DNA of 61,853 nucleotides, filler included, from Hausera hauseri (GCA_046269625.1; 11 parts of 11 records of this genome joined end to end with filler, not necessarily neighbours in it), one strand, 5' to 3'. Shown: positions 52,230-61,853, counted from the first letter of the whole stretch. The notes: generated from the letters alone by a model not told the origin. Translations and numbers: made by a program.

Positions 52230-53390
52230 NNNNNNNNNNNNNNNNNNNNNNNNNNNNNNNNNNNNNNNNNNNNTTAATTAATTAANNNNNNNNNNNNNNN
52301 NNNNNNNNNNNNNNNNNNNNNNNNNNNNNATTCCAGTTTCTGAACGATACCAAACCGAACAGGAATTCGAGAGTCCGAATAAGCAAAGAAAATTCGTCGA
52401 AACTCTATATCGAATTGCTACCATTTTCGGATTTACAGAAATCATTTTTGTTTCCATTATTAAGCCTTGTCAAGAAAAATTAAGTGGTGGATGAATTGGA
52501 AAATGATTTCTCTATCACTTTGTTTTATTTTTTACTCGTTGTCCTACCAAAATTAGTCAATTTCACTCAACAAATGAATTATTTTCTGTCTTTAAACTAT
52601 TTGCTGAATTACAAAATTTGTGGCAAATTTAATCCGTTTATCATTTAATTGTGCCTGGATGACTTTGTCTTTTAAATTCGCACTTAGCAAAAGAATAAAA
52701 ACGTTTTCCGTAATTTCAGGCTCATTATGTACATAGTAGACGAGTGCAGGAATGCATTGTACAGCCGATTTACCCGACCCGTGTTTTATTTTTAAAAAAA
52801 CTATATGTTGTGCATGGTGAACAACTATAATGTTTCTTGTTTTAACGTATAAAAATGTTACTTTTAATTTTTTCATTGCCACATTTTCACAATGTTCAAT
52901 AAAAGTTTTAGTCTATTTTCTATAATCAATTTCTTTTTTGTTGTTGGCTTTTGTACAGTCGATCTTACTAGAATGTTGTAAACATCAGATTTCAAATCCC
53001 TCAATAATCTTTGGTGGCAGTATTGGGATGAATGTGGTTTCTTTTGGGGGTGGGTTGACTCTACCAATAAATCTTGGTACCGCGATTTTATTTTTCATAA
53101 TTGAATCAGTTAAGGAACAACACAAAAGTAACAATCAGCAACATAATTGGTGTCAGAATCTCATTTCACAGGACAGGCCAGTCTTAACCGTTTTGAAACC
53201 GGATCATGACTGTTGAGTTTTTGGAAACGATCTAAGGTGGGTGAATTTGCTGAATTGTGCATTTTTCGGCTCGTCGAAATTTTACGTGTTTGAGCTTATG
53301 TATAATTTCTTTTTTAGTAAAAAATTTAGTCAACTTGCCAGATATAATGTTTTTCATTTATGGCCGTTTATCACTAGAATTTCTAACGAA

Positions 53391-54265
53391 ATCGATACGA
53401 TATGGTTAGAAAATATTAATGCACTTTTTGACGACAATAACAAACTATTTTTAATGAGTGGCTATACTATTCAAACGACTGGTCTGCGGGGCGTCATATA
53501 TGAACCGGAGGATTTGGAACAAACTGCTCCTGCTATTATGAGTCGATATGGAATGTTTTACTTGAAACCATCGAAATTGGACATAGAACCATTGACTAAA
53601 TCATTGCGTGACCATAATATTCCAAATTGCCTATATAGCGAACAAAAATAAACCATCCAATTTTTGACTGATTGGCTTTAATCACCATACTGTAATCTTA
53701 TCGTGCGCAAATGTGTTCTATACATAAAAAGCGCTCCCGTTCAGTTAACATGCGACATGCTACAGCTTTATACTTCTCCCTTAAAGCATATGAAAAAGGT
53801 CGAATAAGACCAAATGATGTTGAAAATGAAGAATTCAAAGAATTTGCTTCAGCAAGCAAAAATTCAATATTAGTAGAAATTACGGAAGGTCAACAAAAAT
53901 TAATTAACCAAAAGGCAATATTTTGGTTGCATATTTCTTTCTCAGTCTAACATGGACTGTCGCACCTCATCTTGACGCTGATTTAAAGATTAAATTTGAC
54001 GGTCTTTTCTGGACTTTGTGTAAAATGACCGATGTGCCCAATCAAAAATGTTCTCAACTCAAAAATATGAAATCTCTCAAAAATTTAAAGAAACCAAAGA
54101 AAGATACGATGTCTGATGGTTTACATGTTCGCAAGAGGTTTCGATCGCAAGTACTGCGGCAATCGTTAACTAAAGTCTGATTTAGAAAAAATTACTAAAG
54201 CCACCGTGATAAGTAACGTACTTATTCCCACTGTAGCAACAGTTTCTCATAGACTTTTACTAAAA
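53391..54265 (+). pseudogene. Captured fragment of an axonemal dynein heavy chain (end of AAA2, lid, linker to AAA3; DNAH3/7/12-like), copy 1
   Basis: IDTIWLENINALFDDNNKLFLMSGYTIQ..IYEPEDLEQTAPAIMSRYGMFYLKP parallels the dynein signature [27 protein letters not shown]..IFEPxDLxxASPATVSRCGMIYMEP; later FFLSLTWTVA..DAD..KFD and VLIPTVAT also fit. Confidence 0.85.
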
Positions 54266-55649
54266 CGATCATCAAATGTCCATAAAAAGGTTTTTGATTC
54301 AGATGTAAACAAAGATAGATGTAATGAAGTAGTTTTAAAGACACCTATCCGATGTAACAGTGGTCATAAAACAAACTGTCTAAACGACCTAGTATGCTTG
54401 GATTTTGAAGATGAATTTTTAAATCAATTTAAGTGAAATGTTTTCATGCTCAGACAGTCACTTGTTCATAGCTAATTGCGATGCTTTATGTTCCTGCTAC
54501 CCCATAGCTCAGCGTTTTCTTCACAAAATTATATCAATTTTTACCTTATTTCATCACAAAAATACACCAAATAATATACAAATATTTTGTGAGTCATCTT
54601 CACACCTGATGTTTTTTCTTATTAAACCGGTTACGCAAAATGACGAGATTTCTTTTGTTTGTTGTATGATACAATGGCTTTGGAAAGTCCAATTGATCTT
54701 TACGTTGTAACAAAAAATATTGAAAAGATTCTGCGTCCATTGGGTGATATGATTCCTTAAACCTTTGTTCAACGATTCGACGATTATGATTTCACAAAAC
54801 TATCGGGCGCACGAATTTTGCGAATAACAGCTCATCGAAATTGCAAAAACAGACACATAGGCAAATAACTTTAATGTTAATAGTCGAATATTCCAAAAAC
54901 AGTAAATCAGAATCAAAGATTGTTACCAATATTGAAAGTAAAACACTTGATAAAACAGTTAAAGAAGATGAATCTTCGAATGATCTAGCTAATAGTCAAA
55001 GTTTTACCGCCCTTATATTACTATGGTCTTCAAAGTCCAAACCCCCCCGAATATCTTCAATACTTTATTTTTGAGTATTCATCTAACTACATATTATTCT
55101 TTGAGTCATTTTCCAGATAATATTCATTTATACAAGAATTCAGTCAAGTATAATAGAAAATCCAAGTTAAACATATTACTGAGAAAATACATTGGCGACA
55201 AAATTTATATGAACTTGAGTTCCGACCGAGCGGGAGTTGTCGTGTGGCGGTCTGAACTCGTGGCATACCAGTTCTGCGACTCGAGTGTCGCCTCGTCGGG
55301 GGTCTTGACGCGCCCGCGCCCGTTGAGGCGCATTGTGCCGCCAGCATATTGGGTAATTCTTTTACCATTTCATCTTCTTTTTAAATAAATACATTCATAC
55401 ACACACCGGAAATCACAAAACATTAGGGTAACATATATACACCTCAATATGCAACGACGTCCATCTTTCTGGCTTCTTTCTATTTCTGAATGGACTCTTT
55501 ATTTGCCCCGACGATCTGATATGCTCTTTTCAATCACATTCTTCATTTCTCTCTCTCTCCATCTAATTCCTAAATTTCGTGGTGGCGCTGACCCCAATTT
55601 TGAGGAGATATAAAAATCCCCAAACATAACCTTTGTTTCTCCAACTCCA

Positions 55650-56640
55650 TCTTCTTTCTCACATTTTCAGTATGTAGACTTTTTCTTCGATAATAAAAAC
55701 TTTTGCGGAACATGGCTGGACTTCCACGCAAAGTGGCTAGCCTCACATAAAATCACTGATTCGTTTCAAGAGGCCAACAGTCTACTTCTCCATCTGCCAC
55801 CCAATATAAATTCCGGCATAACTAATCTTTCTGACACCTTTAATCATTCTGACTCATATAAATTACCACCGGACGCCGTAACTACATCAACCGAGCCTTC
55901 ATTAGACTGAATAATACAAAAATACTTCAACGAAAACGCTCTTGGTCAACAAAATCCCTCAGAATTTCTTTGAATATCACTTTCACAACTAAACTTACTA
56001 GGAGTAAATCAACAAAATAACGCGGATTTTCTTTGACGTTATTTCTTTTTATCCTTGCCAATCAAAATTCGCGCACTTCTTACTGTTGTGGAGGATTCTA
56101 CGTCGCTCGACAAACTGGCGCAATGTGCGGACAAAAGTTACCAAATTTTTTATAACAATAATGCACATAAACCGATTTGAGCTCTGCAAGTGGCGCAATC
56201 AGCAACAATAGTTACACATCTACAATAAGCTAACTCATCAAATAACGAGAACAGTGTAGTTTATCAAATTCAAAATCTGCAGGCCAAAAATGCGGCCCTA
56301 CATCAAGCCATATCGGCCATCTTTAGCAAAATTGCCGCTTTGACTCTACCGCGTCGTGGTCGGTTTATAACGGATCGAAGCAGACAGTCGTCTGCAAACT
56401 CTAGGCACGCCCAGTCAACTTAGCGACAAATGATGTACTATTATCACACAAAATTCGATCAAAATGCCAAAAAATGCTGTATAGGCCGTAAGTTCTAAAC
56501 GCAGCATTTCCAGTCACATGATACGGTCTGCATCTATCACAGTAAGTTTAAAGACAATGCAGAACGCTGCTCATCTGGGTGTTAGTTTTACACCCAGAAA
56601 ACTTCAACATCTTCATCTATTCAAAAATACGTCTAAAGCC
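55650..56640 (+). pseudogene. gag: Gag with doubled CHCC finger
   Basis: YYHTKFDQNAKKCCIG and CIYHSKFKDNAERCSSGC; collinear with 46950-47881. Confidence 0.8.
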
Positions 56641-58160
56641 GCCAGAAACTACGGCAAATTCTGGCAAAGGCCATCTTTTCCGTTTTCACTTCCGTACTTC
56701 TACCAATAGCGTTTTCTTATTGGATGTTGCACTCACATCTTTTCATCACCACACTAAATTTATGATCGATTCAGGTGCAGCTGTTTCATTACTACCTTCA
56801 TCTTTCACATCACTAAAAATGTTCCCTACGTCTACTAAACTCTTCACGGGAAATAGGCAAGCATTACTTATTTTTGGTGCCGAAGAAATGTTTTTCACCA
56901 TGCCATATTTTTCTGGTGTCTTTCAAAAGAAGCTCATTGTTCAAGATATTAAAACATCAATTTTAGGGTCTGATTTTTTATCGCACTACAACTTACTACT
57001 TGATTGCGGGCAGCAACGTGTGATTAAAAGTACAATCAATTATACGAAATCAAAAAATATTGCACCATTTGTCGCGCAGTTGGCTGTAGCTCTGAAATCT
57101 ATATTAAAGAAATATTTTATTAAATTAGATAAATTGAATTATGGTAACTCCGATTGTGACGTTTCCATTCATAGAGTAACAACAAAAACAATTGTCAACA
57201 CCGACACAACCTCTCACCTCACCTCCCCATTAATGCAACTGGATACAGCTCTTCGTGACTACATTACAATATCTTGTCCTAGAGCATTGAAGCATGACCC
57301 CAATTTTAAGCCTGCTTCTACAACGTATCATCGCATCGTCACTGAACACCAAAGACCAATTAAACAGAAGATTAGGCCGCTTTCTCCACGCAGACGCAAA
57401 ACTGTGGAATCAGAGTTCAATGAATTAGAAAAGGCAGGAATTATAAGAAGATCAAAGTCATCTTGGGCTTCACCTCTGCACGTAGTGCCGAAGAAGGACG
57501 GTACTTTCAGACCCTGTGGCGATTATCGCCAATTAAACAATATTACGGTAATGGATGCATATCCATTACCGCTTATCAACGATATCCTACACAGACTCAA
57601 TGGAAACACCATATTTTCATCCGTCGATTTTCATAAAGCCTACCATTAGATTCCTGTCTCACCTGCTGACATACGAAAAGCAGCTGTGACAACACCTTTC
57701 GGCCTTCTTGAGTATGTCTTTATGTTCTTTTGTCTGCGTAGTGCCTCCCAAACATTTCAAAGGCACATAAACACAATTCTTGCTAGTCTAAACTTTGCAT
57801 TTCCTTTAATAGATGACATTGTCATAGCTTCGTCATTACCTAAACAATATTCTGAGCACTTGCGCATAGCTTTTCAACGCCTTCACCAAAATAATTTAGA
57901 ATTAAATGTCGCCAAATGTTCTTTTTTCCAACACAAGATCAATTTCCTTGGTCATGTCATCACTAAGTTTGGCTACTCTCCTCAGCAAGACCGCATAACT
58001 CAGCTTAAAAACATCCAGTTGCCACGAACAACAACTGAAATGCACTTTTTTCTTGGAACACTCCACTTTGTTCACAAATATGTGCCACATTGCTCTAAAT
58101 TGACCACACCGTTTGCCATTTTATCGTCTGGAAAGAAGAAACAACTAATTCACTGGACTT
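56640..58160 (+). pseudogene. pol: Pol: protease and reverse transcriptase (RNase H and integrase absent)
   Basis: ORFs 56579-57649 and 57686-58327; homology to 47900-49550 ends at IHWT. Confidence 0.93.
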
Positions 58161-59396
58161 CATTATATTGCCATTTTAGTGACGGTAATGGTGTGATGCC
58201 GCGGTTGCAGGCATCATTACCACTTATGACAAGCGTTTGGCGGCTGGCTGCCTTTTGGACCGGTGTTCCACTCGACCCGACTTTAGCTTGCCGACTCTCG
58301 TCCGGACGGCAGTCGTCCAAGAATTGAACCGAACACAGAAAGATTTCACGAAGTCATTGGAGATCGGTTTCTCAGGATGACTAAAAGAGCGAAATATTCT
58401 TGAGTCAGTGAGAAACACATAAATGATGATTAGAAAAGTTGATGCGCTACAATTTTCACGTCCAGAAACTAGTTTTTGTGCAGTAAAGAAATAGCCATAA
58501 AAAGGAAGAAAGAACTGACCATTAAAACAGTAAAAGTTCAATTAAAACTGTAAAAAATCAAGGACATGTCAGTCATGATTCCAGTTTCTGAACGATACCA
58601 AACCGAACAGGAATTTCAGAGTCCGAATAAGCAAAAAAAATGCGTCGAAACTATATATCGAATTGCTACCCTTTTCGGATTTACAGAAATCATTCTTGTT
58701 TTCATTATTAAGCTTTGTCAAAAATTTAAGTGGTGGATGAATTGGAAAATGTTCTTTCTATCACTTTGCCGTATTTTTTACTCGTTGTCATACCAAAATT
58801 AGTCAATTTCACTCAACAAATGAATTATTTTTTGTCTTTGAACTATTTGCTGAATTACAAAATTTGTGGCAAATTTAACCCGTTTATCGTTTAATTGTGC
58901 CTGGATGACCTTGTCTCTTAAATTTGCACTTAGCAAAAGAATAGAAAACATTTTCCGTAATTTCAGGCTCATTGTGTACATAGTAGATGAGTGTAGAAAC
59001 GTATTGTACAGCCGATTTACCCGACCTGTGCTTTATTTTAAAAAGATCTATGTTGTGCATGGTGAACAACTATAATGTTTTTTGTTTTAACGTATAAAAA
59101 AATGTTACTTTCAATTTTTTCATCGCCATATTTTCACAGTGCTAAATAAAAGTTTTAGTCTGTTTTCTATAATCAATTTCTTTTTTTGCTGTTGGCTTTT
59201 GTACAGTCGATCTCACTAGAATTTTGTAAACATCAGACGTCAAATCCCCTCAATAATCTTTGATGGCGGTATTGGGAGGAATGCGGCGTCTTCTGCGGGT
59301 GGGTTAGCTTTCCCAATAAATCTTGGTACCGCGATTTTATTTTTCAAAATTGAATCAGTTAAGGAACAACACGAAAGTAACAATCAGCAACATAAT

Positions 59397-59406
59397 TGGT
59401 GTCAGA
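59397..59406 (+). promoter_or_regulatory. Candidate PBS (tRNA-Leu type); also at 53148-53158
   Basis: CAACA-TAAT-TGGTGTCAGA(A), preceded by TATAAA and AATAAA in both copies. It would define a ~1.2-kb LTR (58192-59392), similar in size to the 1126-bp solo LTR. The match is only 10-11 nt. Confidence 0.45.
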
Positions 59407-59638
59407 TTCTCATTCACGGGGCAGGCCAATCCCAACCGTTTTGAAACTGGATCATGACTGTTGCGTTTTTGGAAACGATCTAAGGTGGGTGAATTTGCTG
59501 TATTGTGTATTTTTGCGCTCGTCGACATTTTACGTGTTTGAGCCAATGTATAATTTCTTTGTTAGTAAAAATTTTAGTCAACTTTCGAGATATAATGTTT
59601 TTCATTTATGGTCGTTTATCACTAGCAATTCTAATGAA

Positions 59639-60499
59639 ATCGATACGATATGGATAGAAAACATTAATGCAGTTTTTGACGACAATAACAAACTATTTTT
59701 AATGAGTGCCGATACTATTCAAATGACTGGCTTGCGGGGCGTGATATATGAACCGGAGGATTTGGAACAAACTACTGCTATTGCGAGTCGACAAGGAATG
59801 TTTTACTTGAAACCATCGAAAGTGGACATAGAACCATTAACTGAATCATGGCGTGACCATAATATACCAAATTGCCTACATACCGAACAAAAAGAAACCA
59901 TCCAATTTTTGATTGATTGGCTTTTACCGCCATGTTGTGATCTTATCGCGCGCAAATGTGTTCTATACAAAATGTGCTCCCGTTCAGTTAACATGCGACA
60001 TGCTACAGCTTTATACTTCTCCTTTGGAGCACATGAAAAAGGTCGAATTAAGGTCAAATGAAGAATTCGAAGAACTTGCATCAGCAAGCGAAAATAAAAT
60101 TTTGGTAGAAATTACGGAAGGTCAACAAAAATTAATTAACGAAAAAGACAATATTTTGGTTGCATATTTCTTCACAGTCGAACATGGACTGTCGCACCTC
60201 AGCTTGACGCTGATTTAAAGATTAAATTTGACGATCTTTTCTGGTCTCGGTATGAAATAACCGATGCGCCCAATCAAAAACATTCTCGACTCAAAAATAT
60301 GAAATTTTCCAAAAATTTAAAGACACCGACGAAAGATACTATGTCTAATAATGTACATATTCGCAAACAATTTGGATCACGGGTGTTGCAGAAATCGTTA
60401 TTTAAAAAGCCTAATTTAGAGAAAATTACTAAAGCCACCAAGATAAGGGACGTAATTATTCCCACTGTAGCAACAGTTTCACAAAGACTTTTACTAAAG
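59639..60499 (+). pseudogene. Captured dynein heavy chain fragment, copy 2
   Basis: IDTIWIENINAVFDDNNKLFLMSADTIQM..EPEDLEQ..SRQGMFYLKP..QKETIQFLIDWLLPPCCD..EKITKATKIRDVIIPTVAT. Confidence 0.85.
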
Positions 60500-61853
60500 T
60501 GATCATCAGAAGTCAATAGAAAGGTTTTCGATTCAGACGTCAGCAAAGATAGATGTTATAAAATAGTTTTAGAACACCCATCCGATGTAACAGTGGTCAC
60601 AAAATAAATTGTCTAAACGACCTGGTATGCTTGGATGTTGAAGATGAACTTTTAAATAGCAGTAATTTAAGTTAAATGTTTTCACGCTCAGACAGTCAGC
60701 TGTTTATAGTTAATTGACATGCTTTATTTTCCTGCTACCCCATAGCTCAGAGTCCTTTTCACAAAATTATATCAAGGTATACCTTCTGACATTACAAAAA
60801 TACACCAAATAATCTACATATGTTTCATTAGTCATTTTCATATTTGCTTTTTTGTCTTATTAAACCGGCTACGCAAATGGACGAGATTCCTTTTGTTAGC
60901 TGTATGATACAATTGGCCTCGGAAAGTCCTTTTGATCTTCATGTTGCTACAAACAATATTGAAAAGATGCTGCATCCATCGGGTGATATGATTCCTTGGA
61001 TTTTTATTCAACGATTCGACGATTATGATTTTACTAAACTATTGGATGCACGAAGTTTACGAATAACAGCTCATCAAAAATTTCAAAAACAGGCATATAG
61101 GCAAATAACTTTAATATTAATAGTCGAATTTTCCGAAAACAGTAAATCAGAATTAAAAATAGTTACCAAAAATGAAGGCAAACCACCTGACAAACAGTTA
61201 AAGAAGATGAATCTTTGAATGATCTATCTGATGGCATAAATATGTTTAAAGTTCCAATTTTACCTCCGTTATACAGCTATAGTCTCCAAAGTCAAAACTC
61301 CCAGAATATCTTCAATACGTTATTTTTGAGCATTCATTTAACCACATGTTATTTTTTGAGTTGTTTTCCAGACAAAATTCATTTATACAAGAGTTCATTT
61401 AAGTATAATAGGAAGTCCAAGTTAAAGATGTCACTAAAAATCCATTGGCGAAAAAATTTATGTAAACATGAGTTCCGTCCGATACGGAGTTGTTGGGTGG
61501 CGGTCTGGACTCGTGGCGTACCGGTTGTGGGGCCCGAGTGTCGCCTCGTTGGAAGTCTTGGTGCGCCCGCGTTCGTTATAGCGCTCTATACCCCAAGCCT
61601 ACTGACCAATTCCTTTACTATTTTCATCTTTTTAAATAGACATTCATACACCGGAAATCACAAAACATTAGGGCAACATATATACACTTCCATTCGCAAT
61701 GACGTCCATTTTTTTGGCTTTTCTCTATTTCTAAATGGACTCATTATTTGCCCCGACGATCTGCTATGTTCTTTTTAACCACATTCTTCATCTCTCTCGC
61801 TCCATCTAATTCCTAAACTTCGTGGTGGCTCTGACCCCAACTCTGAGGAGATA

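What the first reader, a model, noticed from the sequence alone, without database searches (positions are those of the whole stretch)
53391..54265. LTR retrotransposon carrying a processed axonemal dynein heavy-chain fragment upstream of gag
Seen: ~290 codons collinear with dynein heavy chain from the AAA2 [15 protein letters not shown] region through the lid to the IIPT motif just before AAA3. There are no evident introns and neither Walker A. It lies ~1.4 kb 5' of a Gypsy gag and recurs in a diverged second copy (59639-60499). Both copies share substitutions away from the dynein consensus as I recall it. Known: LTR elements transduce host mRNA fragments by template switching. Inference: an old capture amplified with the element. 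It may be an accessory protein (motor-domain mimic or decoy) or a source of small RNAs against a ciliary/sperm dynein gene.
Basis: partly seen in the sequence, partly recalled or inferred. Interest (0 to 1): 0.82.

Follow-up and report, generated by a model that had tools for sequence, protein, structure and literature searches.

The report
Retroelement-borne dynein–NAT10 chimeric reading frame
A decayed piece of an axonemal dynein gene is really there, but it is only one module of a long chimeric reading frame (dynein piece fused to a piece of the RNA acetyltransferase NAT10) carried next to the gag-pol genes of a truncated, multi-copy Gypsy-type retroelement: a new animal example of a known kind of host-gene capture, with the twist that the frame stayed open long after the host functions were lost.

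Summary
53391-54265 and 59639-60499 are collinear with dynein heavy chain DNAH3 residues about 1794-2061 (E 5e-22), with no intron-sized gap and no Walker A. Both copies are broken.

Three things change the picture:
- **The second copy is not independent.** The piece is about 1.5 units of a 6.25-kb head-to-tail repeat, 88% identical.
- **A second host fragment follows the dynein piece.** It comes from NAT10/Kre33 (PF13718, E 1e-18) and lies on the same strand.
- **The breaks are not shared.** Every stop and frameshift from 52926 to about 55566 is private to one copy. There are 0 shared stops, against 24 ± 3.4 in shuffles and 21 on the opposite strand. The common ancestor therefore had one open frame of at least 755 codons. 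By then that frame had already lost 11-15 of 41 near-invariant dynein residues and both motif glycines of NAT10.

Contigs of a public run show the unit is multi-copy.

The best reading is capture of two host mRNA pieces by reverse-transcriptase template switching, carried in a 3'-truncated Ty3/Gypsy element. The frame was long kept open by selection and is now decaying neutrally.

The LTR limits, tandem versus dispersed amplification, and intron loss relative to the host genes remain untested. A decoy or small-RNA role is not supported.

The parts
52330..53143 (+). 3' part of a candidate LTR, cut by the edge of the piece. It is the same sequence as 58578-59392. It holds TATAAAA at 52848 and AATAAA at 52898, and ends in CA at 53142-53143.
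   Evidence: It aligns with 58578-59392 at 90-95% identity. Summed contig depth is about 370, roughly twice that of the following ORF region.
53148..53163 (+). First primer-binding-site-like sequence, TGGTGTCAGAATCTCA, 4 nt after the CA. The copy-2 equivalent is 59397-59412.
   Evidence: Read from the sequence. The resemblance of its first 11 nt to the 3' end of a tRNA-Leu rests on my memory only and was not tested.
53298..55566 (+). Chimeric frame 'ORF-A', copy 1: ATG at 53298 to TAA at 55564. In this copy it is broken by private stops and frameshifts. The stretch free of shared stops already begins at 52926.
   Evidence: The alignment path has 0 stops shared by both copies, against 24.0 ± 3.4 in 200 column shuffles and 21 on the reverse strand. 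For the pre-ATG stretch 52926-53297 the count is 0 against 3.3, reached in 2 of 200 shuffles.
53391..54265 (+). Dynein heavy-chain fragment, copy 1. It covers the distal AAA2 region plus the lid and ends at the IIPT motif, and corresponds to DNAH3 residues about 1794-2061.
54450..54920 (+). NAT10/Kre33 (RNA cytidine acetyltransferase) fragment, copy 1, corresponding to Kre33 residues about 510-669. The 184 nt between the dynein end and 54450 are not assigned by any tool.
   Evidence: Pfam PF13718 with E 8.6e-8. PDB Kre33 chains with E 1.3e-11, residues 510-586. The end is inferred from copy 2.
55546..55560 (+). CT-rich run that differs by 2 nt between the copies. As a result, the frame relation between ORF-A and gag differs between copies.
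   Evidence: In run X1 the shorter form carries 32.6 of 230 depth (table 4).
55580..55595 (+). Second primer-binding-site-like sequence, TGGTGGCGCTGACCCC. It lies 14 nt after the ORF-A stop and just before gag. The copy-2 equivalent is 61823-61838.
   Evidence: Read from the sequence. Summed contig depth rises from 186 to 524 to 1680 across 55300-55900.
55611..56590 (+). Degenerate gag. It has one frame and no frameshift, with nine in-frame stops from 55611 to 56585. It has no Met codon for most of its length and holds two CxYHxKFxxxAxxC knuckle-like motifs.
   Evidence: There is a weak tblastn match to P0034. At two of the stops the X1 contigs read sense codons.
56579..58160 (+). Protease (DSGA) and reverse transcriptase of Ty3/Gypsy type. 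There is one internal stop and no frameshift. Homology ends at the RT/RNase H linker. No RNase H or integrase follows.
   Evidence: Pfam RVT_1. 449 relatives, the best at 39% identity over 94% of the query, many also carrying the RNase H domains PF17917/PF17919. P0001 residues 21-501 of 566 align to 56639-58159.
58161..58498 (+). Tail of unknown origin after the truncated pol. It is richer in G+C (0.45).
58499..58514 (+). Polypurine tract AAAAAGGAAGAAAGAA, followed by C and then TG.
   Evidence: It is the longest purine run on the + strand of the whole piece.
58516..59392 (+). Candidate LTR, short version: 877 bp, TG...CA. If the second PBS-like site is the one used instead, the LTR would run to about 61822 (about 3.3 kb) and would contain ORF-A.
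   Evidence: There is no other internal repeat in the unit. This part is inference, not shown.
59546..61812 (+). ORF-A, copy 2. It is broken by its own private stops and frameshifts, and its end is approximate.
59639..60499 (+). Dynein heavy-chain fragment, copy 2.
60688..61158 (+). NAT10/Kre33 fragment, copy 2. Its start is approximate and is placed by alignment to copy 1.
   Evidence: Pfam PF13718 with E 1e-18, profile positions 29-139 of 229. PDB Kre33/NAT10 with E 1.8e-11, residues 563-668.

Best explanation
The dynein-like stretch is one module of a chimeric reading frame, ORF-A. Its parts, in order, are a short leader, a DNAH3-type dynein AAA2-to-lid segment, a NAT10 segment and a tail.

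ORF-A lies between an LTR-like stretch and the PBS-like site and gag of a Ty3/Gypsy element that has lost RNase H and integrase. The whole 6.25-kb unit is repeated head to tail in the piece and occurs many times in the genome.

**Proposed history (inferred).**
1. During reverse transcription in a virus-like particle, the RT switched from element RNA to two co-packaged host mRNAs and back. This is LTR-mediated retroposition.
2. The result was an intronless two-gene chimera inside the element.
3. The chimeric element then multiplied as a non-autonomous element and/or by unequal crossing-over.

**Later evolution.** For a long time after the original dynein and NAT10 functions were gone, the frame was kept free of stops and frameshifts. 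It was therefore translated or otherwise needed as an open frame. Perhaps it served as an upstream or N-terminal coding extension for a gag that has no start codon of its own. Since the two copies here separated (about 12% divergence), the frame has been decaying neutrally.

**What is shown:** the two homologies, their collinearity, the tandem unit, the multi-copy status, the ancestral open frame, and the neutral decay since the split.

**What is inferred:** mRNA origin, template switching, the LTR limits, and the reason the frame was kept open.
For: - **Dynein homology.** E 5e-22, collinear over about 268 dynein residues.
- **NAT10 homology.** Pfam E 1e-18, PDB E 1e-11, on the same strand directly downstream.
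- **No other protein-family match above noise in the rest of the repeat**.
- **Head-to-tail repeat.** It is 88% identical and runs to both edges of the piece, including the PBS-like site.
- **Retroelement genes.** PR-RT of Ty3/Gypsy type ends at the RT/RNase H linker. Gag lies in a single frame.
- **LTR signals.** The longest purine run of the piece, followed by TG, lies 340 nt after pol. CA plus a 4-nt spacer plus TGG follows 877 nt later.
- **Ancestral open frame.** 0 shared stops over 755 codons against 24 ± 3.4 in shuffles and 21 on the reverse strand. All 17 indels differ between the two copies, and the alignment path keeps one frame open across all of them.
- **Loss of host constraint before the split.**
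  - 11 of 41 near-invariant dynein positions are changed to the same residue in both copies, and 4 more to different residues. Every real dynein keeps at least 91% of these positions.
  - The stem branch is 2.08 substitutions per site, against 0.11-0.20 for the two tips.
  - Both glycines of NAT10's MGYG stretch are replaced in both copies (alignment, copy 1).
- **Neutral decay since the split.** dN/dS is 0.55, the same as in a control frame.
- **Multi-copy status.**
  - 2424 contigs at least 80% alike lie on 6 kb in run X1.
  - Dynein bins have summed depth 160-190, while single contigs there have depth 3-6 and are 84-89% identical.
  - Both indel states of several sites are carried by several contigs.
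- **Known mechanism and precedents.** Animal two-gene retrocopies within LTR elements, and maize Bs1 (PMC5131818).
Against: - No host DNAH3 or NAT10 gene was available, so intron loss and microsimilarity at the junctions are untested.
- No copy with two flanking LTRs and a target-site duplication was seen. The only arrangement seen is tandem, which unequal crossing-over alone could produce.
- There are two PBS-like sites, so the LTR could be 877 bp or about 3.3 kb. Neither site was checked against host tRNAs.
- The stop-free stretch also covers the candidate U5 and first PBS (2 of 200 shuffles), which fits poorly with the short-LTR model.
- Summed depth of the ORF-A region (145-230) is lower than that of the flanking backbone (370-520). 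Many relatives may therefore lack ORF-A.
- In most contigs the CT run has the length at which ORF-A stops before gag and is out of frame with it. This weakens the Gag-extension idea.
- Part of the long stem branch could belong to a fast-evolving source gene rather than to post-capture evolution.
Confidence: 0.6

Rival explanations
1. Macrosatellite or segmental amplification. A chimeric retro-pseudogene (dynein plus NAT10) happened to lie next to a dead Gypsy fragment. The 6.25-kb block was then amplified by unequal crossing-over, without retrotransposition of the block.
For: The only arrangement seen is head-to-tail, with one LTR-like stretch per unit and no second repeat inside the unit. Depth of the candidate LTR is not higher than that of other backbone parts. 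Pol is truncated.
Against: A canonical order of signals surrounds the block: pol remnant, polypurine tract, TG...CA, TGG. Contigs range from under 90% to over 99% identity, and the stretch is present in a second organism, as expected of an old dispersed family. A frame kept open while host constraint was lost needs selection on a transcribed and translated unit. That is not expected of a satellite.
Confidence: 0.22
2. The host fragments were gathered by another kind of mobile element (Helitron or Pack-type DNA transposon), or by ectopic recombination at the DNA level. The Gypsy sequence is an unrelated nested neighbour.
For: Multi-gene fragment mosaics are typical of such elements. About 1.3 kb of the repeat (58161-59545) has no recognisable origin.
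Against: Both fragments are long, collinear and free of intron-sized gaps. They are fused on one strand in one frame that stayed open. No inverted repeats were found in the piece. Both units in the piece have the same junction to gag and RT.
Confidence: 0.07
3. The tandem arrangement is an assembly artefact. The contig would join different genomic copies of a repeat, so the 'two linked copies' say nothing about local structure.
For: The piece begins and ends inside the repeat. The family is multi-copy with sub-lineages.
Against: The two copies differ by 12%, so they are not a collapsed duplicate. This rival affects only the arrangement. It does not affect the homologies or the ancestral open frame.
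Confidence: 0.1

Closest known systems
LTR-mediated retroposition chimeras in animals (Tan et al. 2016, PMC5131818)
   Same: Partial, intronless copies of host mRNAs sit inside LTR-retrotransposon sequence. Two parental genes can be combined in one retrocopy. The chimeras behave as non-autonomous elements and are copied again. There is no poly(A) tail.
   Different: Those cases are young, mostly single or few-copy, and replace part of the element's ORFs. Here the capture is old and multi-copy, and lies upstream of gag, either in the 5' leader or in a very long LTR. It was kept as an open frame through long divergence. Junction microsimilarity could not be checked.
Maize Bs1 (Elrouby and Bureau 2010, PMC2899935, as summarised in PMC5131818 and PMC7264820)
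   Same: An LTR retrotransposon carries partial exonic sequences of several unlinked host genes. [quoted passage not shown]
   Different: Bs1 is a plant element with other genes. I did not read the Bs1 paper itself, so its ORF details are not compared here.
Additional ORFs of LTR retrotransposons (plants: PMC7264820; bdelloid rotifers: PMC5408684)
   Same: An extra reading frame besides gag and pol is carried and propagated by the element.
   Different: Most described extra ORFs have no recognisable host parent or are env-like. Here two host parents are recognisable, and their catalytic or nucleotide-binding motifs are missing.
Axonemal inner-arm dynein heavy chains (DNAH3/7/12) and NAT10/Kre33
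   Same: Significant, collinear sequence homology to defined segments of each.
   Different: Only about 270 of about 4100 dynein residues and about 160 of about 1050 NAT10 residues are confirmed. The sequences are 26-46% identical to real ones, lack the defining motifs, and are now interrupted.

Membership tests
Ty3/Gypsy (Metaviridae) LTR retrotransposon | Reverse transcriptase of the Ty3/Gypsy type, preceded by a retropepsin | tested here: met
   Pfam RVT_1 matches, and DSGA is in the ORF. There are 449 relatives, many carrying RVT_1 plus RT_RNaseH/RT_RNaseH_2. A 518-aa tblastn match has 44% identity to P0001.
Ty3/Gypsy (Metaviridae) LTR retrotransposon | RNase H and integrase downstream of RT | tested here: not met
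   Pol homology stops at about 58160, which is residue 501 of 566 in P0001. No pol-like match lies anywhere beyond it, and Pfam finds no RNase H or integrase in the rest of the repeat. This copy is a truncated, non-autonomous derivative.
Ty3/Gypsy (Metaviridae) LTR retrotransposon | Two LTRs flanking the internal region, with a target-site duplication | tested here: inconclusive
   There is one LTR-like stretch per 6.25-kb period. The piece is cut inside the repeat at both ends, and no flanks are visible.
Ty3/Gypsy (Metaviridae) LTR retrotransposon | Polypurine tract before the 3' LTR and a tRNA primer-binding site after the 5' LTR | tested here: inconclusive
   A 16-nt purine run followed by TG is present. 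There are two TGG-initiated candidates, at 53148 and 55580. Complementarity to host tRNAs was not testable.
LTR-mediated retrocopy / captured host gene fragment | Sequence derived from host protein-coding genes | tested here: met
   Dynein E 5e-22. NAT10 Pfam E 1e-18 and PDB E 1e-11.
LTR-mediated retrocopy / captured host gene fragment | Introns of the parent gene absent | not testable with these tools
   No host genome was at hand. What is shown is only collinearity without intron-sized gaps: about 268 dynein and about 160 NAT10 residues.
LTR-mediated retrocopy / captured host gene fragment | Retrotransposon sequence on both sides, with the same junctions in all copies | tested here: met
   Truncated RT plus an LTR-like stretch lies upstream, and the PBS-like site plus gag lies downstream. 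The junctions are identical in both units. Other genomic copies were seen only as short contigs.
LTR-mediated retrocopy / captured host gene fragment | Microsimilarity between element and mRNA at the switch points | not testable with these tools
Functional dynein heavy chain | Ring of six AAA modules with P-loops | tested here: not met
   Homology is confined to DNAH3 residues about 1794-2061. Of 41 near-invariant positions, 15 are lost. Stops and frameshifts are present.
Functional NAT10/Kre33 acetyltransferase | Helicase-type domain plus a GNAT domain with the glycine-containing acetyl-CoA-binding motif | tested here: not met
   Only Kre33 residues about 510-669 are present. The positions aligned to the MGYG stretch read QAYR in copy 2 and QTHR in copy 1. 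That this motif binds acetyl-CoA is from general knowledge of GNAT enzymes.

The most novel reading that the evidence does not exclude
The dynein-NAT10 frame is, or recently was, a genuine element-encoded protein rather than inert cargo. On this reading, intact copies still exist in this genome and are translated. They might act as an N-terminal extension of Gag or as a separate upstream protein. Selection among element lineages keeps the frame open while the sequence evolves freely. This would be an animal counterpart of a retrotransposon-made chimeric gene built from a motor-protein lid and an RNA-modifying enzyme fold.
Probability: 0.2. Interest if true: 0.7.

Novelty: new member of a known kind. 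Interest (0 to 1): 0.45.

Why it matters
Capture of host mRNA pieces by LTR retroelements is known, in animals mostly from young, single-copy cases. This example is old and multi-copy, and fuses two unrelated genes in one frame.

It also allows a clean inference: the frame was kept open long after the host functions were lost. That points to selection at the level of the element (translation of, or through, captured sequence) rather than at the level of the host.

Such elements also inflate apparent gene families. Lineage-specific 'DNAH3' copies in genome annotations may be of this kind. A clam genome paper reports 13 such copies (PMC11592408), but that is a lead only and is not linked to this window.

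Tried and rejected
- **Extension of the dynein homology upstream to the AAA2 Walker A.** It looked plausible by eye, but tblastn and phmmer against 150 dyneins gave only noise. Rejected.
- **A decayed AAA3 Walker A/B after IIPT.** Also by eye. No tool supports dynein homology there, and the stretch from 54450 on is confirmed NAT10. By eye the supposed Walker B region at about 54395-54420 resembles NAT10, but that rests on my memory and is untested.
- **Upstream extension of the NAT10 fragment into 54266-54449.** This rests on my memory of NAT10 only. The PDB search and the protein atlas gave nothing. Left unassigned.
- **A helicase fragment on the minus strand (52595-52912, GSGKS motif).** Pfam DEAD E 0.05, no PDB hit. 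Treated as chance.
- **Tail of ORF-A and the pre-ATG stretch.** No relatives found.
- **LTR-internal-LTR with the repeat as simple LTRs.** Rejected in simple form, because the similarity runs on through the PBS-like site to the edge of the piece.
- **Purifying selection between the two copies.** The apparent dN/dS of 0.55 is matched by a control frame, so there is no evidence for it.
- **Word search for ORF-sized relatives of the dynein ORF.** None found.
- **Metagenome scan with a conserved 22-mer.** No match.
- **tRNA and Rfam scans.** Nothing found.

Full report
**Scope.** Only places 52330-61853 were studied. This stretch is 9524 bases with no N. G+C is about 0.33, rising to 0.38-0.43 between about 55330 and 58330.

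**1.
- The ORF 59396-60061 matches solved axonemal inner-arm dynein heavy chains. DNAH3 gives E 4.7e-22 to 6.4e-22, DNAH12 gives 8e-20 and DNAH7 gives 7e-17, at residues about 1748-1857 or 1794-1903.
- The segment 60140-60499 continues to DNAH3 1953-2061 and ends at the IIPT motif.
- tblastn with ten long dyneins begins sharply at 53391 and 59639. It is collinear for 249-274 dynein residues over 279-296 codons, so no intron-sized insertion is present.
- Nothing dynein-like lies upstream or downstream. Neither Walker A is included.
- In both copies the frame is interrupted by stops and frameshifts.
- A scan of 1.84 billion representative proteins found no dynein more than 46% identical. The best matches are scattered over flatworm, alga and protists, so there is no taxonomic signal.

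**2. The second copy is the next unit of a tandem repeat**
- 52330-55610 aligns with 58578-61853 at 88% identity, from the first to the last base of the piece.
- The similarity continues through a PBS-like sequence to the edge.
- The piece is therefore about 1.5 units of a 6.25-kb head-to-tail repeat.
- No other repeat lies inside the unit.

**3. A second host gene fragment follows**
- Pfam finds GNAT_acetyltr_2 (PF13718) in 60844-61218 with E 1e-18, and in 54438-54710 with E 8.6e-8.
- Solved Kre33/NAT10 chains match at residues 563-668 and 510-586, with E about 1e-11.
- The fragment is on the same strand and begins at most 184 nt after the dynein end.
- A Pfam scan of all 73 stop-to-stop segments of the repeat, on both strands, found no other credible family. 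The two further hits were near the E 0.01 cut-off.

**4. The retroelement**
- 56579-58160 encodes a retropepsin (DSGA) and a Ty3/Gypsy-type reverse transcriptase, with one internal stop and no frameshift. The best relative is 39-44% identical.
- Homology ends at the RT/RNase H linker. RNase H and integrase are absent.
- Upstream, 55611-56590 is a gag-like frame with two CxYHxKFxxxAxxC motifs and nine stops, but no frameshift and no Met codon for most of its length.
- At two of these stops the contigs of run X1 read sense codons, so those breaks are private to this copy.
- After pol come, in order:
  - a 338-nt tail;
  - the longest purine run of the piece (58499-58514);
  - TG at 58516;
  - 877 nt later, CA followed by TAAT and TGGTGTCAGAATCTCA.
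- A second TGG-initiated, G+C-rich sequence (55580-55595) lies 14 nt after the end of the chimeric frame and just before gag.
- Which of the two sites primes reverse transcription decides the LTR length. It would be either 877 bp or about 3.3 kb with the chimeric frame inside it. This could not be settled.

**5. The ancestral frame was open**
- I aligned the two copies and looked for the path that minimises stops shared by both. At each of the 17 indels, either state was allowed to be ancestral.
- On the forward strand no stop is shared from 52926 to the end of the alignment. On the reverse strand 21-27 are shared, and upstream of 52926 seven are shared.
- For the stretch from the first shared ATG (53298) to the TAA at 55564, the count is 0 against 24.0 ± 3.4 in 200 column shuffles, with a minimum of 13.
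- The common ancestor of the two copies therefore had one open frame of at least 755 codons: leader, dynein piece, NAT10 piece, tail.
- The stop-free stretch also covers 52926-53297 (2 of 200 shuffles). This is unexplained if that stretch is U5 plus PBS.

**6. The frame had already lost the host functions**
- Of 44 alignment columns at least 90% conserved in 27 real dyneins, three have a gap or break in one copy. Each real dynein keeps at least 91% of these columns.
- Of the remaining 41 columns:
  - both copies keep 23;
  - one copy keeps 3;
  - 11 carry the same different residue in both copies;
  - 4 carry different residues in the two copies.
- In a FastTree tree the stem leading to the two copies is 2.08 substitutions per site. 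The two tips are 0.11 and 0.20, and the median for real dynein tips is 0.75.
- In the NAT10 piece, both glycines of the MGYG stretch are replaced in both copies.
- Since the split each copy gained 5-6 stops, and about 17 indels accumulated between the two copies, at about 6% divergence per lineage.
- The pre-split loss of constrained residues implies, by my estimate, two to three times as much unconstrained change. That should have left about 14 shared stops and many shared frameshifts. None is seen.
- This is inference, but a strong one: the frame was kept open by selection while its sequence was free to change.
- Between the two copies there is no sign of such selection. dN/dS is 0.55, and the control frames give 0.54 and 0.95. 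Differences by codon position are 110, 81 and 111.

**7. The unit is multi-copy**
- One public run (X1) holds 47% of the sampled words. It is probably the same species.
- On 52900-58899, 2424 of its contigs match at 80% or more. By identity class they number 192, 385, 894 and 953, for at least 99%, 95-99%, 90-95% and under 90%.
- In the dynein bins the summed depth is 160-190. Individual contigs listed there have depth 3.4 and 5.8 and are 84-89% identical to the window.
- For several indels that distinguish the two copies, each state is carried by several contigs. The two copies therefore stand for sub-lineages, and the indels are not read errors.
- Depth is about 370-520 on the backbone (candidate LTR, tail, PBS2 and leader) and 145-230 on ORF-A. 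Many relatives may lack ORF-A.
- A second organism (X2) has 160 matching contigs. One is 99.6% identical over 55504-55746, and others match at 53086-53295 and at 54214/54530.
- No RNA run was on offer.

**8. Interpretation**
- The anatomy fits LTR-mediated retroposition. In that process RT switches between element RNA and co-packaged host mRNAs. The products are partial, intronless, sometimes two-gene chimeras that are then copied as non-autonomous elements (PMC5131818). Maize Bs1 is the classic multi-gene case (PMC2899935, cited in PMC7264820).
- What is unusual here is the position upstream of gag and the long maintenance of the open frame.
- One possible reason is that gag, which has no start codon of its own here, depended on translation from upstream. 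The two copies differ by 2 nt in a CT run just before gag, so the frame relation differs between copies. Most X1 contigs have the length at which ORF-A ends before gag. This idea is therefore weak.

**9. Limits**
- No host parent genes, no flanks, no RNA data and no further full-length copies were available.
Copies were compared as they are, and read through with X at breaks inside scripts only.

Noticed in passing
window 54450-54920 and 60688-61158: A NAT10/Kre33 (RNA cytidine acetyltransferase) fragment lies directly downstream of the dynein piece, on the same strand and in the same ancestral frame.
   Followed up: yes
window 55546-55560 (copy 2 about 61793-61805): A CT-rich run differs by 2 nt between the copies. 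This changes the frame relation between the chimeric ORF and gag. In run X1 the shorter form is the minority.
   Followed up: partly
window 55195-55345 and 58180-58330: Two G+C-rich patches sit in otherwise A+T-rich sequence, one in the tail of ORF-A and one after the truncated pol. They are not similar to each other. One X1 contig lacks about 55213-55505.
   Followed up: partly
window 55611-56590: The gag frame has nine stops but no frameshift, and PR-RT has one stop and none. ORF-A of the same unit carries about eight frameshifting indels. Indels are concentrated in the A+T-rich captured part.
   Followed up: partly
window 55504-55746: A contig from a second, differently labelled organism (run X2) is 99.6% identical here, while most of its other matches are under 90%. 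This could be a very recent shared copy, contamination, or horizontal transfer.
   Followed up: no
window 52926-53297 (copy 2 59175-59545): This stretch, which would be U5 plus the first PBS-like site in the short-LTR model, is free of shared stops in the ORF-A frame (2 of 200 shuffles). It has no recognisable relatives.
   Followed up: partly
window 52595-52912, minus strand (copy 2 58887-59069): A minus-strand ORF has a GSGKS P-loop-like motif and a weak Pfam DEAD hit (E 0.05). There was no PDB match, so it is probably chance.
   Followed up: yes
literature, not the window: A Manila clam genome paper (PMC11592408) reports 13 lineage-specific 'dynein heavy chain 3' copies that are absent from five other molluscs. 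Such families might be element-borne fragments like this one. No link to this window was established.
   Followed up: no
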